DNA from: Saccostrea echinata
Taxonomy: Eukaryota
Direction: 5' to 3'
NCBI RefSeq assembly: GCF_033153115.1
Contig: NW_026889782.1
Span: forward strand, 14,198,001-14,262,000
DNA: 64,000 nt
The translations under genes and the position numbers were made by a program. The notes beneath the pieces are model-generated. The model saw nothing but the letters and a program-made list of their open reading frames with translations, was not told the DNA's origin and did not search any database. This document shows, piece by piece, positions 30,566-46,515 of the stretch (position 1 is its first letter; the number at the start of each line of letters is the position of its first letter).

Positions 30566-30804
30566 CTACATTCGTGTTATCATGAGAATTGATGAGTTGA
30601 AAATTGTCATGTTCAGAACTCCCTGGTACACCTGGTCCCCTCCAAATCCTCGTGGAGCATTTAGAAACACTAATCCACATTCATCGAACCACCACCCTCC
30701 TCTGAAATCTACTGCACAGTTAAACGCCCATCTATCATTGTCTCTATCATATGTCGAGAACGAAATACCATTCATACCTCCAGCGTAACCTTTACTAAGG
30801 TCGC
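30566..30804 (-). CDS. LU-FReD gene exon 13 (FReD C-terminus, stop)
   Basis: [27 protein letters not shown]...GGWWF..C...LN..MITRM*. Confidence 0.92.
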
Positions 30805-33800
30805 CTGTGAATTAACAAAAGTATGACTGAAAAACGCTTAAAGGCAGATAAGTCCAAATTAAGAAGATATTTTGTTTTACAGGATGTTTAAAAGATATCG
30901 TTCATTTACCAGCAGTTCCAGACGCCTTTCCAAGAGTAATGGTGTAGTTTTGAGCTTCGGATGCTACTTTCATGTTGTCAAATCTTTCATACCAGGAACT
31001 GCCATTCGTACTTGAAATACCAATATAAAACTGTGTTCTATGTGGAGATGTCAAAAGATGAATGACCTCATTTCCTAGAAAGTAAAGATTGTCATAATAT
31101 AACAAAATGCCTCCTTTAATAGCAAAGGACTTGAGATTTGTGGCATAAAACAGTTACATTCTCTTAAAAACAGCAACCTAATCAATGAATGTTATCAAAG
31201 TTAAAAAAAAAGAAAGAAGATATTTGTTAATGTTATTTGAACAATGAATTGATACAGAAAAAATGAATTTATATGGCAAAATAATTTAAATGATAAAAAA
31301 ATTATTTATCATTACATAAATCATTTCGGCAAGGTTCATGTAATATTGTGTATTTAATATAATTATCAGAGAAAATAATGTCAAAATAGAAAAACCGCTT
31401 TCAAAAATTAATGTTATTTGATCAAAGACTGTTACCAATACATGTATATATGCATTTCGCAGGCGTTCCATACCTGCTTGTTAGATAATGAGAGGTTGCT
31501 TTACAGTACAGTACGTATTGGATATCATATGAGCTATATCCGCTGTATAAAGGAGTAATCATGTAATAAAATATCATATTAAATTACAACTGGAAAATTG
31601 TTAAGGTTTTCAAATAGGTTTTAAATTTGAATTTTGTGAACTCGAAACATGTAAAATTAGAAGATTGTTTTCTAGTCAAACGTACCCAACCAGAATTCAC
31701 CAGTGACATTACCAAAGCCATTCTTATATTCTTCCCAGCTCTTATAAAAATTTTCATTTAAAGGATGCCGCCATTGAAACACCTAGGAAAGGACAGATAA
31801 AATTCAGAAACAACTTTGTATTTAAAAGCGACTGCAGTATACAACTGATAAGATAAATAAGGACAACTACATGTATATTCAATACAAGCTCATTTGTATT
31901 ATAGATACAGTATAGATATAAAACTACAGATTGTCGAAAAGGACAATGAGAAGATAGAAAATGATGTAAATGAATCATTATTATTCAATTGATTGTAAAA
32001 ATAAAGTCAAAGTGAATGCTTTTAATTCACCAGACATATTGATATAGTTACACTGACTAGATGCTTACAATAACGCTATATATTTATAAATTTAAACTAC
32101 TGAAGTTGTTAAGCTTGATTTTATGCAAGCGTTAGTAGCGTACATTTGAAGGAGCAATAAAAAGCAAGATAAGAATCCCCTCACCGTCCAGCCTTTGGGC
32201 TCAACATCCATATTACAGAGCACGTCTATTGGCCTCCCCCTGGATCCCCATGGATAGATTTGGTATATGCCCGTTTTATTATAACCTTCATGTAAGATTT
32301 CCCAGCAATCAAACGGAAACGGATCTAAAACATTAAACACTATTATTTTTCACTGGTTCTTTGGAATTGTTTTCATTCTTGAGTATAAAACTTTGGTATT
32401 CAATTTTTATTAAAACAGAAATATTGAAAATAGCGAAAATTGAATGCAAAAGGAAAAAAAAAAGAAAAGAGACAAAATTCCAAATACAAGGTACATCGTA
32501 ATTGTATCAATATTATAAAATAAATTACATACATGTAATACAAGGGTTTTCAGGTAAAATCGTGGACAAAGCGTTTTTATCCAAAAATTAAGGGCACACT
32601 AAGCTGCAATTTTCAGCAAAGGTTTATTATCATTTAAGTCCATCATAATTTTTTTGATAAAATATAGACAAAATATAGATTCTATTACACTAGAATGTGC
32701 CCAGGGTACGGTCATATGGCGCACGATAAAAAAAACAACAACTAGGGTTTCATTCTAGAATACGTGGGTATTATTTCGAAATAAAAGTTTGAAATCGATA
32801 CGACTGGGTTAAAAACTATCCACTTATTTTAATTCATTATCTATTTTGTCGACATCTGGAAAATTTCAAGGTATTTGTATGCATTTAACAATATTCAAAT
32901 TCAAATTATTCGAATATACAGTTGTATATTTAATAATCAGCCTTGTTGCAAAATTATTTCATTACTACTTTAATTTTGAATAGTTCAGTTAAGAATGTCA
33001 GCTCTATCTGTTCTGATTCTGATATAACTTCATTTTTGAGGGGCTGATTTCATAACTTGTTCTCTAATCTTCACCCATGAGGCCCACATGAACGATTTTA
33101 AAGTTATAAGAATTGCGTATTCATTTGCAAATTCAATTATCAACATCTATTTTTTCTAAATCATACAAACGATATTGTAAATCTTTCAGACGATTTTAAA
33201 AAAAATTGAAAATCGAAGCTCTTATTAGTTATTATAGAGAATACCTGAAAATAACAACTTCAGAAGTACTTGAAAGAGTACATAGTGATTGATGAGTTTG
33301 TTAAGGAGATTTTTAACTAAAACTAACATATCCTACTGATCGTACATGTAAGTCTTGATCTAGTGTTCAACTGCTCAGGTATGTTAAGGCAGCACATAGA
33401 TCAGAATTCGGTGAATTTATACTTTTTTGTAAAATGTAAATAAATCGGGCCGTAGATAAAACATTACTATTTTTATCCATTTAATAGACGTCATACAGTC
33501 CGACTAAAAGAAGCAATCCACTATATGAAATAACATAACGTCTATAAATAGAAAAAAAATGCCTTAATGAAAAAGTGAAAAGTTCAAAACTGCCCTGTGG
33601 ATAATTCATTTCTCTTCTTTGTTATCATGATAAGTATGTGAAAACATCACTGGGCCATGAAAAGTGCTGCTTGAATCCTACACTCCTCGGTCTTATGTAC
33701 ACAATGTAAAAATTTTGCTATAGCTTCATGCGAAAACAGGGAATAATTATTTCTGTGATAGGAATTTTCATCAATTTATGTTAAGCACACGATCAAGTAT

Positions 33801-45800: not shown

Positions 45801-46515
45801 GAGTTTTGTAAGCTAAAGCTTTTTGATCGATTCCTTGGGTAGATCAAAACATAAGGACAAACAGCTACTTGTAATAGCGAAAGACGCTGTCACTGTAGAC
45901 CATCGTTATAAGATACCCTGTTTAGTTGAATGATAGTGAGAGTACTGTCCATAACTTACTAATAAATTTTCAGAAGGTCCCATGTGTATGTAAGATTGGT
46001 TCCTCGACTGTTTTTGGAGGAATAAAGGGAAACTCAAGTATGTGCATCAGTGAAATTCCCGAAAAGCGGGGATTATCCAACTTTTTTTAGCAAAGAGGAA
46101 GCGTGACGCTGCTGTAGACACTATGACGTTATCATCCGTGCATATATAACCATAGATATTATAAAATCTCATATTTTGTTTTATTTGAAATTATATCTAT
46201 TTGAAATTTGCTATGTATATTGATGAAAAATGCACTAAAGAATAGTGAAAATTTTAGAACGCAGTGATGATTATTTTTCACCCTACACAACTTGTCCACG
46301 ATTTCACAGAACAATCCTCTTAGATGTGATTCTGTAATTTGGCATTTCTAGAAATGTAAACAATGTATAAAAAGTTATACTTTATTTAAAAGATAAAAAT
46401 CTCACAAATGTCTCGCAGTTGTCACCTAGGTAAAGAACATATATTTTGAAAATTTTACCTAATTATAATCCCGGCAAGTTTAAAACTTACAAATAATAAA
46501 TGTAGCACACTCCAT
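30566..46515 (-). CDS. 13-exon gene, 437 aa: signal peptide + 2 x Ly6/uPAR (three-finger) domains + Thr-rich stalk + fibrinogen C-terminal (FReD) domain
   Basis: Exons 46515-46491, 45006-44974, 42492-42413, 41817-41746, 40526-40403, 39737-39643, 35803-35735, 34990-34900, 34745-34662, 32324-32185, 31782-31686, 31074-30910, 30804-30566. All introns are GT..AG and all phases are compatible. Total 1314 nt with no internal stop. AATAAA at 30478-30473. Confidence 0.8.
30910..31074 (-). CDS. LU-FReD gene exon 12 (FReD)
   Basis: [10 protein letters not shown]...[25 protein letters not shown], phase 1-1. Confidence 0.92.
31686..31782 (-). CDS. LU-FReD gene exon 11 (FReD)
   Basis: [33 protein letters not shown], phase 0-1. 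Confidence 0.92.
32185..32324 (-). CDS. LU-FReD gene exon 10 (FReD start)
   Basis: [27 protein letters not shown]...[13 protein letters not shown], phase 1-0. Confidence 0.92.
32540..32885 (+). mobile_element. Truncated copy of the mariner-like MITE seen at 45274-46320
   Basis: Colinear similarity to 45274-45610, starting ta|caagggttttcaggtaaaatcgtggacaaagcg. Confidence 0.65.
34662..34745 (-). CDS. LU-FReD gene exon 9 (Thr/Ser-rich mucin-like stalk)
   Basis: [28 protein letters not shown], phase 1-1. Confidence 0.8.
34900..34990 (-). CDS. LU-FReD gene exon 8 (end of LU domain 2)
   Basis: [30 protein letters not shown] with the CCxxDxCN signature, phase 0-1. Confidence 0.88.
35735..35803 (-). 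CDS. LU-FReD gene exon 7 (middle of LU domain 2)
   Basis: [23 protein letters not shown], cag|..|gtgagt, phase 0-0. Confidence 0.82.
36940..37710 (-). mobile_element. Degraded LINE ORF1 remnant in intron 6 of the LU-FReD gene
   Basis: Fragments ..[14 protein letters not shown].., MIDPLREQI.., ..VNQDLTK.. and [13 protein letters not shown] resemble ORF1 of CR1/L2-type elements. Many stops and frameshifts. Confidence 0.55.
39643..39737 (-). CDS. LU-FReD gene exon 6 (start of LU domain 2)
   Basis: [32 protein letters not shown], phase 1-0. Confidence 0.86.
40403..40526 (-). CDS. LU-FReD gene exon 5 (end of LU domain 1)
   Basis: [41 protein letters not shown], phase 0-1. Confidence 0.88.
40790..41295 (+). 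mobile_element. Naiad-type Penelope-like element, 3' fragment
   Basis: [40 protein letters not shown], plus the family 3' tail shared with 51378-51820 and 56505-56935. Confidence 0.75.
41746..41817 (-). CDS. LU-FReD gene exon 4 (middle of LU domain 1)
   Basis: [24 protein letters not shown], phase 0-0. Confidence 0.85.
42413..42492 (-). CDS. LU-FReD gene exon 3 (start of LU domain 1)
   Basis: [27 protein letters not shown], phase 1-0. Confidence 0.87.
44454..44761 (+). mobile_element. tRNA-derived SINE (possibly Meta/MESC-domain type)
   Basis: Box A tggggcagtgg, box B ggttcgaatcc, core taaaccgaggtcccgtgtc, (AAAC)n tail, imperfect TSD catttaaaaacg/cattcaaaaacg. Second copy at 48945-49227. 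Confidence 0.85.
44974..45006 (-). CDS. LU-FReD gene exon 2 (end of signal peptide)
   Basis: tttcag|(L)[10 protein letters not shown]|gtatgt, phase 1-1. A paralogous exon lies at 50582-50614. Confidence 0.75.
45274..46320. mobile_element. Tc1/mariner-like non-autonomous element (about 1.05 kb)
   Basis: TA|cgagggttgtccggtaaaatagttgacaa ... ttgtccacgatttcacagaacaatcctct|TA: imperfect TIRs and TA TSD. Confidence 0.7.
46491..46515 (-). CDS. LU-FReD gene exon 1 (start codon)
   Basis: accATGG context. MECATFII+T|gtaagt, phase 1, completing the signal peptide [17 protein letters not shown]. Confidence 0.72.

What the first reader, a model, noticed from the sequence alone, without database searches (positions are those of the whole stretch)
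30566..46515. Intact secreted lectin with tandem three-finger (Ly6/uPAR) domains fused through a mucin stalk to a fibrinogen domain: a FREP-like architecture with LU in place of IgSF
SEEN: 13 short exons, mostly invisible or misread in the ORF track, splice by GT..AG with matching phases into a 437-aa stop-free ORF. Sequence: [19 protein letters not shown] | [34 protein letters not shown] | [30 protein letters not shown] | [27 protein letters not shown] | [48 protein letters not shown]: CCxxDxCN marks the Ly6/uPAR/three-finger fold. FReD domains are invertebrate pattern-recognition modules, and gastropod FREPs pair a FReD with one or two N-terminal IgSF domains. INFERENCE: this is a bifunctional immune adaptor, with FReD binding microbial glycans and the LU pair binding a host receptor or protease. 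It has no collagen or coiled-coil oligomeriser and no GPI or TM tail. I do not know of a described LU-LU-FReD family but cannot search for one.
Basis: partly seen in the sequence, partly recalled or inferred. Interest (0 to 1): 0.85.

Follow-up and report, generated by a model that had tools for sequence, protein, structure and literature searches.

The report
Oyster three-finger–fibrinogen mosaic lectin gene
This is a real, intact, expressed oyster gene for a secreted protein with two Ly6/uPAR-like modules, a sugar-coated stalk and a fibrinogen-type lectin head; it belongs to a small conserved bivalve family noted in one 2026 survey, so it is interesting but not new in kind.

Summary
On the minus strand, 13 exons (46515 to 30566) join through GT..AG introns with matching phases into a stop-free 437-aa ORF: signal peptide, two 12-Cys Ly6/uPAR-like (LU) modules, a 27-aa stalk (63% Ser/Thr) and a fibrinogen-related domain (FReD).

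Contigs of one probable RNA run confirm two junctions (E7/E8, E12/E13) with no mismatches, but none crosses the LU-to-FReD link. That link rests on homology:
- Two Saccostrea cucullata RefSeq isoforms align collinearly to E5-E13.
- Full-length proteins with the same architecture exist in four Mytilus species, one deposited as "Fibrinogen-related protein 10".
- Four paralogous loci in this genome (C15 x2, C27 x2) repeat the LU-then-FReD exon order.

The architecture is no longer undescribed: a 2026 survey (PMC13719153) reports a molluscan LU+FreD protein. New here:
- the oyster multigene family;
- the same LU-LU cassette on a different head (IgGFc-binding-like);
- LU exons more conserved than the FReD ligand-binding half;
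- loss of the ficolin-type pocket histidine.

The three-finger fold was not confirmed structurally (AlphaFold2 pLDDT 32). The immune-adaptor function is inference. The scan separately noted an LU-LU-gC1q fusion in this genome; I did not check it.

The parts
46491..46515 (-). E1: start codon and first 8 residues of the signal peptide (ends in phase 1)
   Evidence: ATG followed by a GTAAGT donor. This is the least supported exon. Contig record 6 of run X1 has about 40-70 nt upstream of E3, enough for E2 and at least part of E1.
44974..45006 (-). E2: rest of the signal peptide (hydrophobic core and a TGT motif near the cleavage site)
   Evidence: TTTCAG acceptor, GTATGT donor, phase 1 to 1. The Mytilus homolog has a similar ...TGTNG end to its signal peptide.
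42413..42492 (-). E3: LU1 first finger (C-x2-C-x8-C-x5-C)
   Evidence: Aligns to Mytilus P0121 residues 23-48. Paralogous exons 63-79% identical lie at about 15 other loci in this genome.
41746..41817 (-). E4: LU1 second finger
   Evidence: The only phase 0-0, stop-free, 2-Cys exon with good splice sites in this interval. Paralogous exons on C15 and C27.
40403..40526 (-). E5: LU1 third finger with C-x2-CC-x4-CN-x3-C, plus the start of the inter-LU linker
   Evidence: 86% identical to Saccostrea P0154 residues 2-36. That alignment runs to 40404, which supports the donor at 40403.
39643..39737 (-). E6: inter-LU linker (YPSRRGP) and LU2 first finger
   Evidence: 85% identical to P0154 residues 37-69. 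Strong polypyrimidine acceptor at 39737. 26 paralogous hits in the genome.
35735..35803 (-). E7: LU2 second finger (cassette exon, skipped in Saccostrea isoform X2)
   Evidence: 88% identical to P0154. The E7/E8 junction is present in an X1 contig with 0 mismatches.
34900..34990 (-). E8: LU2 third finger with C-x2-CC-x4-CN
   Evidence: Junction to E7 confirmed. Read-through past the donor meets a stop after 10 codons, with no GPI-type tail.
34662..34745 (-). E9: stalk, 27 in-frame residues with 14 Thr and 3 Ser, phase 1 to 1
   Evidence: Equivalent Thr-rich stalks in Saccostrea and Mytilus proteins and a T/P-rich ORF at the same position in the C15 paralog.
32185..32324 (-). E10: FReD part 1 (A domain, first Cys pair)
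   Evidence: Pfam Fibrinogen_C positions 2-44, E 2.3e-5. 80% identical to P0154.
31686..31782 (-). E11: FReD part 2 (WEEYKNGFG motif)
   Evidence: Pfam positions 46-77, E 1.2e-7.
30910..31074 (-). E12: FReD part 3
   Evidence: Pfam positions 79-132, E 3.8e-4. The E12/E13 junction is present in an X1 contig with 0 mismatches.
30566..30804 (-). E13: FReD part 4 (Ca2+ motif, second Cys pair, GGWWF, C-terminal strand) and the stop codon
   Evidence: Pfam positions 147-203, E 3.8e-11. 100% identical to residues 67-144 of library protein P0001.

Best explanation
Shown: this is one intact, transcribed 13-exon gene of an oyster. It encodes a 437-aa secreted mosaic protein made of a signal peptide, two tandem Ly6/uPAR-type modules, a short Thr-rich stalk and a C-terminal fibrinogen-related domain. 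Each LU module has the canonical 10-Cys pattern plus one extra Cys pair. The stalk is probably O-glycosylated. The gene belongs to a family conserved in oysters and mussels, with at least five loci in this genome. Inferred: it is a soluble recognition protein in which the FReD is the variable, Ca2+-dependent ligand-binding head and the conserved LU-LU cassette is a protein-docking handle that couples the head to a host partner (receptor, protease or another humoral factor). The cassette looks like a shuffled module, because bivalves also place it on at least one other head, an IgGFc-binding-like domain. I put the architecture and single-gene status at about 0.93 and the recognition-adaptor mechanism at about 0.4.
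For: - Gene model: stop-free, phase-consistent, all GT..AG.
- FReD: four collinear Pfam matches.
- Transcription: spliced contigs with 0 mismatches over E7/E8 and E12/E13 in run X1.
- Ortholog: Saccostrea cucullata RefSeq isoforms P0154 and P0008 align collinearly to E5-E13 and contain LU, stalk and FReD in one protein.
- Mussels: proteins of 435-447 aa from four Mytilus species have SP-LU-LU-stalk-FReD.
- Paralogs: four more loci in this genome repeat the order E3-E8 then E10-E13 on one strand.
- LU identity: canonical Cys spacing and CCxxxxCN. Among the nine proteins of alignment A2 (eight LU-FReD relatives plus LU-IgGFcBP P0255), the only Pfam families that recur on the N-terminal part are LU-clan ones: Toxin_TOLIP in 6 of 9 and UPAR_LY6 in 5 of 9. 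The best is P0255 residues 19-92, 21.7 bits against a cut-off of 21.2. All ten best named clusters in the protein-language-model search are LU-clan.
- Shared cassette: Mytilus P0255 carries a homologous SP-LU-LU-stalk (37% identity, E 1e-42) on EGF plus IgGFc_binding. In this genome LU exons on C17 and C54 lie 1.5-7 kb upstream of IgGFc_binding exons.
- Handle versus head: LU exons are 85-88% identical to the Saccostrea ortholog, against 51% for E12-E13.
- Ca2+ motif FSTxDxDND..NCA is kept.
- No GPI or TM tail: the C-terminus aligns with the last FReD strand.
Against: - No transcript contig crosses E8-E9-E10; E9, E10 and E11 had zero depth in the only run available. The LU-FReD link in this particular gene therefore rests on homology.
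- The three-finger fold was not confirmed by structure. AlphaFold2 on the Mytilus homolog with a 9-sequence alignment gave mean pLDDT 32.
- Window LU exons hit no Pfam model on their own, and most homolog hits are below threshold.
- The ficolin/FIBCD1-type pocket His is replaced (Gly here) and the W..W.G loop is 7 residues shorter, so glycan binding is not assured.
- There is no evident oligomerisation module, which lectins of this kind usually need for avidity.
- No expression, binding or challenge data exist for any member.
Confidence: 0.6

Rival explanations
1. Two adjacent genes wrongly merged: a secreted LU-LU protein that ends after E8 or E9, and a separate FReD gene with its own first exon.
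For: No RNA contig bridges E8-E9-E10. Read-through of the E8 donor or the E9 donor meets a stop within 10 and 5 codons, so short LU-only products are formally possible. A library protein (P0001, 144 aa) covers only the 3' end of the gene.
Against: E8, E9 and E10 are all phase 1 and join in frame. E10 starts at Fibrinogen_C profile position 2 and has no signal peptide of its own; the 2.3-kb intron holds no convincing alternative first exon. Saccostrea and Mytilus proteins contain both halves. Four paralogous loci keep the same LU-then-FReD order. P0001 starts in a shifted frame inside E11, so it is a truncated gene call.
Confidence: 0.04
2. One gene, but not an immune receptor. It could be an extracellular matrix, adhesion or signalling ligand (angiopoietin- or tenascin-like use of the FReD), with the LU pair modulating a receptor as Lynx/SLURP-type proteins do.
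For: The canonical acetyl-binding pocket is altered. FReDs of angiopoietins, FGL1 and tenascins bind proteins, and these are the closest solved structures by sequence. LU proteins commonly act as receptor modulators (general knowledge; PMC13719153 introduction). There is no oligomerisation module.
Against: The family sits in a genome with at least 498 FReD candidates and at least 695 C1q candidates, expansions usually linked to bivalve immunity. The FReD ligand-binding half diverges much faster than the LU half, which is typical of recognition heads. None of this is decisive.
Confidence: 0.25
3. Roles reversed. The LU pair is the recognition or neutralising part, binding a toxin, protease or pore-former as PLI-gamma, uPAR or CD59 do, and the FReD tethers the complex to host glycans or cells.
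For: Tandem LU proteins are known inhibitors and binders of proteins (general knowledge). The same LU-LU cassette appears on unrelated heads.
Against: The LU exons are the most conserved part between oyster genera. That fits a fixed host partner better than a variable foreign target.
Confidence: 0.1
4. A decaying or silent copy of the family, a pseudogene in the making.
For: Decayed relatives exist: the upstream C15 copy (C15:10591612-10600997) has a stop and lost cysteines, and a frameshifted E3-E4 relic lies 3-7 kb upstream in the window.
Against: All 13 exons are open with canonical splice sites. All 28 mature cysteines are in place. Spliced contigs with 0 mismatches exist for both halves.
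Confidence: 0.02

Closest known systems
Molluscan three-finger protein with a fibrinogen-like domain (LU+FreD), reported in PMC13719153 (Acta Naturae 2026;18(3):83-93, Figs 2B(5) and 4(5))
   Same: A secreted protein that combines LU domain(s) with a C-terminal FReD in molluscs. The authors counted it genuine because related species and transcriptome assemblies carry it.
   Different: The paper gives one sentence and a figure that I could not read, so species, accession and number of LU domains are unknown to me. It does not describe the exon structure, the oyster multigene family, the shared cassette or the altered binding pocket.
Saccostrea cucullata 'fibrinogen-like protein 1 isoform X1' / 'fibrinogen-like protein A isoform X2' (P0154, P0008), and Mytilus 'Fibrinogen-related protein 10', 'angiopoietin-2-like' and an uncharacterized protein (P0153, P0151, P0121, P0152)
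   Same: Orthologs or close homologs with the same LU-LU-stalk-FReD order, the same 12-Cys LU pattern and the same C-terminal ...S(I/L)(L/M)MIT(K/R)(V/M) ending.
   Different: Their database records name only the fibrinogen domain, and the precomputed Pfam annotation is PF00147 alone. The Saccostrea models lack the signal peptide and the first two LU1 exons.
Gastropod FREPs (IgSF + FReD) and bivalve coiled-coil FREPs
   Same: A secreted invertebrate protein with a non-lectin N-terminal module, a linker and a C-terminal FReD, in a lineage with a large FReD expansion.
   Different: It has no IgSF domain and no coiled coil; the N-terminal module is LU-LU. No evidence of somatic diversification was looked for.
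C4.4A/LYPD3-type proteins (LU-LU, Ser/Thr/Pro-rich stalk, GPI anchor); comparison from my own knowledge
   Same: Two tandem LU domains followed by a mucin-like stalk.
   Different: Here the stalk ends in a FReD instead of a GPI anchor, and each LU has 12 rather than 8-10 cysteines.
Ficolins, FIBCD1 and tachylectin-5A (acetyl-group-binding FReD lectins)
   Same: FReD with both disulfides and the Ca2+ motif.
   Different: No collagen, TM or N-terminal oligomerising region. The pocket His is replaced by Gly, and the W..W.G loop is shortened by 7 residues.
Mytilus edulis P0255 (SP-LU-LU-stalk-EGF-IgGFc_binding) and the LU plus IgGFc_binding loci on C17 and C54 of this genome
   Same: A homologous SP-LU-LU-stalk cassette (37% identity, E 1e-42).
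   Different: A different C-terminal head, an IgGFc-binding-like domain.

Membership tests
Fibrinogen-related domain (Pfam PF00147 Fibrinogen_C) | Significant match to the family profile across the domain | tested here: met
   Exon by exon: profile 2-44 (24.8 bits), 46-77 (32.2), 79-132 (20.8, just under the 22-bit cut-off) and 147-203 (43.7). The matches are collinear. Homologs score 161-165 bits.
Fibrinogen-related domain (Pfam PF00147 Fibrinogen_C) | Two conserved disulfide pairs and the Ca2+ loop motif D-x-D-x-D before NCA | tested here: met
   There are four FReD cysteines: the first pair in E10 (...FDC and ...VLC) and the second pair in E13 (FNC and DEC). The E13 pair and FSTYDRDND...NCA align with ficolin and FIBCD1 sequences.
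Acetyl-binding FReD lectins (ficolin / FIBCD1 / tachylectin-5A type) | S1 pocket residues: His directly after the second P-domain Cys, then Tyr-Ala and the W..W.G loop (residue roles recalled from the literature, not from a tool) | tested here: not met
   The His position holds Gly here, Tyr in Saccostrea and Glu in Mytilus. A 7-residue deletion removes the W..W.G segment. One Tyr may be retained.
Ly6/uPAR (LU) three-finger domain | Canonical cysteine framework: N-terminal C-x2-C, 8-10 Cys in the LU spacing, C-terminal CC-x4-C-N | tested here: met
   Both modules read C-x2-C-x8-C-x5-C-x5-C-x18-C-x5-C-x(14-22)-C-x2-CC-x4-CN-x2/3-C. The cysteines are invariant across Saccostrea and Mytilus homologs.
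Ly6/uPAR (LU) three-finger domain | Profile match to an LU-clan Pfam family at the curated threshold | tested here: inconclusive
Window LU exons (23-37 aa pieces): no hit. Homologs: Toxin_TOLIP 21.7 bits against a 21.2 cut-off on P0255 LU1; UPAR_LY6 best E 0.014; LU-clan families in 5-6 of 9 alignment members and no competing family. Language-model neighbours are all LU-clan, score 0.86, which is a lead only.
Ly6/uPAR (LU) three-finger domain | Three-finger beta-structural fold | tested here: inconclusive
   AlphaFold2 of Mytilus P0121 with a 9-sequence alignment gave mean pLDDT 32, which is unusable. The low-confidence model was strand-rich in both LU regions. PMC13719153 states that it predicted its LU+FreD protein with AlphaFold3 and does not list it among the cases with poor LU prediction.
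Gastropod FREP (sensu Biomphalaria) | One or two N-terminal IgSF domains upstream of the FReD | tested here: not met
   No Ig-family hit on any exon or homolog; the N-terminal half is LU-LU.
GPI-anchored Ly6 proteins | C-terminal hydrophobic GPI signal after the LU domain | tested here: not met
   E8 is followed by a splice donor. Read-through gives 10 non-hydrophobic residues and a stop. The protein ends in the last FReD strand.
Molluscan LU+FreD three-finger proteins (PMC13719153) | Signal peptide, LU domain(s) and FReD in one secreted chain, present in related species | tested here: met
   for the architecture and its conservation; for the paper's definition.

The most novel reading that the evidence does not exclude
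The LU-LU-stalk cassette is a common coupling handle that bivalves place under several unrelated recognition heads. FReD and IgGFc-binding-like heads are shown here; a gC1q head is reported by PMC13719153 and by an unchecked first-reader note on this genome. On this reading the cassette does what the collagen stalk does for vertebrate ficolins, C1q and collectins: it links diverse sensors to one shared downstream partner.
Probability: 0.15. Interest if true: 0.75.

Novelty: new member of a known kind. Interest (0 to 1): 0.42.

Why it matters
Bivalves have hundreds of FReD and C1q genes, and how these heads connect to effector functions is poorly understood. The LU-LU-FReD family is conserved between oysters and mussels, and its N-terminal cassette is both better conserved than its ligand-binding half and reused on another head. 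That makes it a tractable entry point: find what the LU pair binds. The case also shows that automated annotation names these proteins by the fibrinogen domain alone, and that in this assembly only a truncated 144-aa product is on record, so the family is easy to miss.

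Tried and rejected
- Pfam on single LU exons gave no hits because the pieces are too short.
- First paralog check: from the best 150 of at least 498 FReD hits I wrongly concluded that LU paralogs had no FReD nearby. 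Reading the C15 and C27 loci directly overturned that.
- Alternative first exon for a stand-alone FReD gene: only AT-rich chance ORFs turned up.
- Structure: AlphaFold2 of the Mytilus homolog failed (pLDDT 32), so I ran no fold search. I did not use the second job because the alignment could not be deepened.
- PDB sequence search with the family profile returned only FReD chains.
The top 150 of at least 695 C1q hits include none next to a cassette, so the LU-gC1q link remains untested.
- The joined 437-aa model was assembled only inside scripts, to check frame and length and for one local alignment of its FReD part against library proteins. It was not sent to any search or fold tool; all such searches were run exon by exon by reference or on library proteins.

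Full report
**1. Observation**

The window is AT-rich (about 31% GC). The Saccostrea matches described in section 2 show that it comes from an oyster genome. The assembly has 923 Mb in 425 contigs, and the window is C33:14198001-14262000.

It has 13 exons between 46515 and 30566. Every intron has GT..AG ends and every phase matches. The exons are:
- two tiny exons for the signal peptide (E1, E2);
- three exons for each LU module (E3-E5 and E6-E8);
- one phase 1-1 stalk exon (E9);
- four FReD exons (E10-E13).

The product is 437 aa with no internal stop when E5 ends at 40403 and E6 starts at 39737. A second in-frame pairing (40415/39719) gives 427 aa. It is disfavoured because the ortholog alignment runs through to 40404 and starts again at 39738, and because the acceptor at 39737 has a long polypyrimidine tract.

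**2. Is it one gene?**

Direct RNA evidence is partial. Only one public run held part of the stretch (X1, guessed to be RNA, Logan contigs). Its contigs carry the E12/E13 junction and the E7/E8 junction with no mismatches. One 542-nt contig starts inside E8 and runs upstream beyond E7 for about 410 nt, enough to reach the signal-peptide exons. So both halves are spliced and expressed at similar low depth. No contig covers E9, E10 or E11, and I have no further read calls.

The LU-to-FReD link therefore rests on four other lines:
- **Frame and exon logic.** E8, E9 and E10 are all phase 1 and join in frame. E10 begins at position 2 of the Fibrinogen_C profile with no leader of its own. Nothing in the 2.3-kb intron looks like a real first exon.
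- **Oyster ortholog.** A search of 1.84 billion representative proteins with E13 found a Saccostrea cucullata protein (P0008). A follow-up found its longer isoform (P0154). Both are RefSeq models. They align collinearly to E5, E6, E7 (skipped in one isoform), E8, E9, E10, E11 and E12-13.
- **Mussel homologs.** Mytilus edulis, M. trossulus and M. galloprovincialis have proteins of 435-447 aa with signal peptide, LU, LU, Thr-rich stalk and FReD. One UniProt entry is named "Fibrinogen-related protein 10".
- **Paralogs in this genome.** Two tandem loci on C15 and two on C27 repeat the order E3-E4-E5-E6-E7-E8, then a T/P-rich ORF, then E10-E13 on one strand. One C15 copy is decayed, with a stop and lost cysteines. 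A sixth FReD exon on C52 is 88% identical to the C15 copy.

I had first concluded that LU paralogs lacked a FReD, because the FReD search scores only the best 150 of at least 498 candidates. Reading the loci corrected that.

**3. Domain identities**

*FReD.* This is secure. The four exons match consecutive parts of PF00147. Both disulfide pairs and the Ca2+ motif are present. The nearest solved relatives by sequence are FGL1, angiopoietins, FIBCD1, ficolins and tachylectin-5A.

*LU.* Both modules have the Ly6/uPAR cysteine framework with the terminal CC-x4-CN. Each also has an extra pair: a Cys three residues before the CC and a Cys two or three residues after the CN. All of these cysteines are invariant across oysters and mussels.
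- Single window exons are too short for Pfam.
- On the nine proteins of alignment A2 (eight LU-FReD relatives plus P0255), the only families that recur on the N-terminal half are LU-clan ones: Toxin_TOLIP in 6 of 9 and UPAR_LY6 in 5 of 9. One is above the curated cut-off: P0255 residues 19-92, 21.7 bits against 21.2.
- A protein-language-model search with the LU-LU part of the Mytilus protein returned only LU-clan clusters among named hits, score 0.86. I treat this as a lead.
- The structural test failed technically. AlphaFold2 with nine sequences gave pLDDT 32 even over the FReD, so I ran no fold search.

**4. Tail, stalk and oligomerisation**

The protein ends in the last FReD strand. Read-through after E8 or E9 gives a few residues and a stop, with no hydrophobic GPI signal. 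E9 encodes 27 residues, of which 14 are Thr and 3 are Ser. I saw no Gly-X-Y repeats and no long segment between LU2 and the FReD that could form a coiled coil. The mature chain has 28 cysteines, an even number, so no free Cys is evident.

**5. What the anatomy suggests**

Three observations bear on mechanism.
- **The LU half is the conserved half.** Identity to the Saccostrea ortholog is 85-88% in E5-E7, 69% in E8, 80% and 73% in E10-E11, and only 51% in E12-E13, the ligand-binding P domain. A conserved handle with a diverging head is what a recognition molecule with a fixed host partner would look like.
- **The pocket is not ficolin-like.** The His after the second P-domain Cys is Gly here, and a 7-residue deletion removes the W..W.G loop. 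The C27 paralogs keep Cys-His. The ligand is therefore open.
- **The SP-LU-LU-stalk cassette is modular.** Mytilus P0255 carries a homologous cassette (37% identity over 218 residues, E 1e-42) on EGF plus an IgGFc-binding domain. In this genome, LU exons on C17 and C54 sit 1.5-7 kb upstream of IgGFc_binding exons on the same strand. About 25-30 cassette loci exist.

PMC13719153 also reports a molluscan LU+C1q protein, and a first-reader note on this genome (s1-820139) describes an LU-LU-gC1q fusion.

**6. Comparison with what is known, and novelty**

The architecture is not a gastropod FREP (no IgSF), not a ficolin (no collagen) and not a GPI-anchored Ly6 protein. [quoted passage not shown] Full-text searches found no other paper linking LU domains and fibrinogen domains in bivalves.

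Orthologs are public but are named by their fibrinogen domain only. In the protein library the window's gene appears only as a 144-aa fragment that starts in a shifted frame inside E11.

I therefore class it as a new member of a known, very recently noted kind. The added points are the exon structure, the oyster multigene family, the shared cassette and the altered pocket.

**7. Verdict**

The architectural reading is supported. The functional reading is plausible but untested, and the novelty claim is weakened. Interest is moderate.

Noticed in passing
window 48784-49514, minus strand: A decayed partial duplicate of the gene's E3 and E4. The E3-like exon (49511-49443) is 70% identical at protein level and keeps an intact donor. 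The E4-like piece (48839-48784) is 5'-truncated and frameshifted by a 2-nt insertion. Nucleotide identity to E3 and E4 is 77-80%. No E5-E13 copies follow it.
   Followed up: partly
window 370-5583, minus strand: A 1737-aa uninterrupted ORF with 18% cysteine and a repeat period of about 33/65 residues. The units look EGF-like (C..C..G.[FY]G..C...C...C....C). It sits in the GC-richer left end of the window (41-43% GC). Pfam gave no hit even at E up to 10.
   Followed up: partly
window 11222-11797, minus strand: A reverse-transcriptase fragment (RVT_1, E 3e-16), so a retroelement remnant lies downstream of the gene.
   Followed up: no
window 26885-28569 (+), next to the N run at 28859-29000: Two consecutive ORFs of 353 and 212 aa in a GC-richer patch (42% GC) with no Pfam hit. 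A short peptide match recurs in opposite orientation at about 26285 and 28686, which hints at an element with inverted ends.
   Followed up: no
window 53327-53788 (+): A 153-aa ORF with a sub-threshold match to a cysteine-stabilised alpha/beta scorpion-toxin or defensin-like domain (23.7 bits against a cut-off of 27).
   Followed up: no
G000 C17:3.52-3.65 Mb and C54:21.08-21.12 Mb: Clusters of LU-LU cassette exons followed by large single IgGFc_binding exons. The genome has at least 165 IgGFc_binding candidates, at least 498 FReD candidates (heavily concentrated on C33) and at least 695 C1q candidates.
   Followed up: partly
G000 C15:10591612-10600997: The upstream copy of the C15 tandem pair of LU-FReD genes looks like a pseudogene. 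It has a stop in the E4-like exon, lost cysteines in the E6- and E7-like exons, no E8- or E10-like hits, and stops in the E13-like exon.
   Followed up: partly
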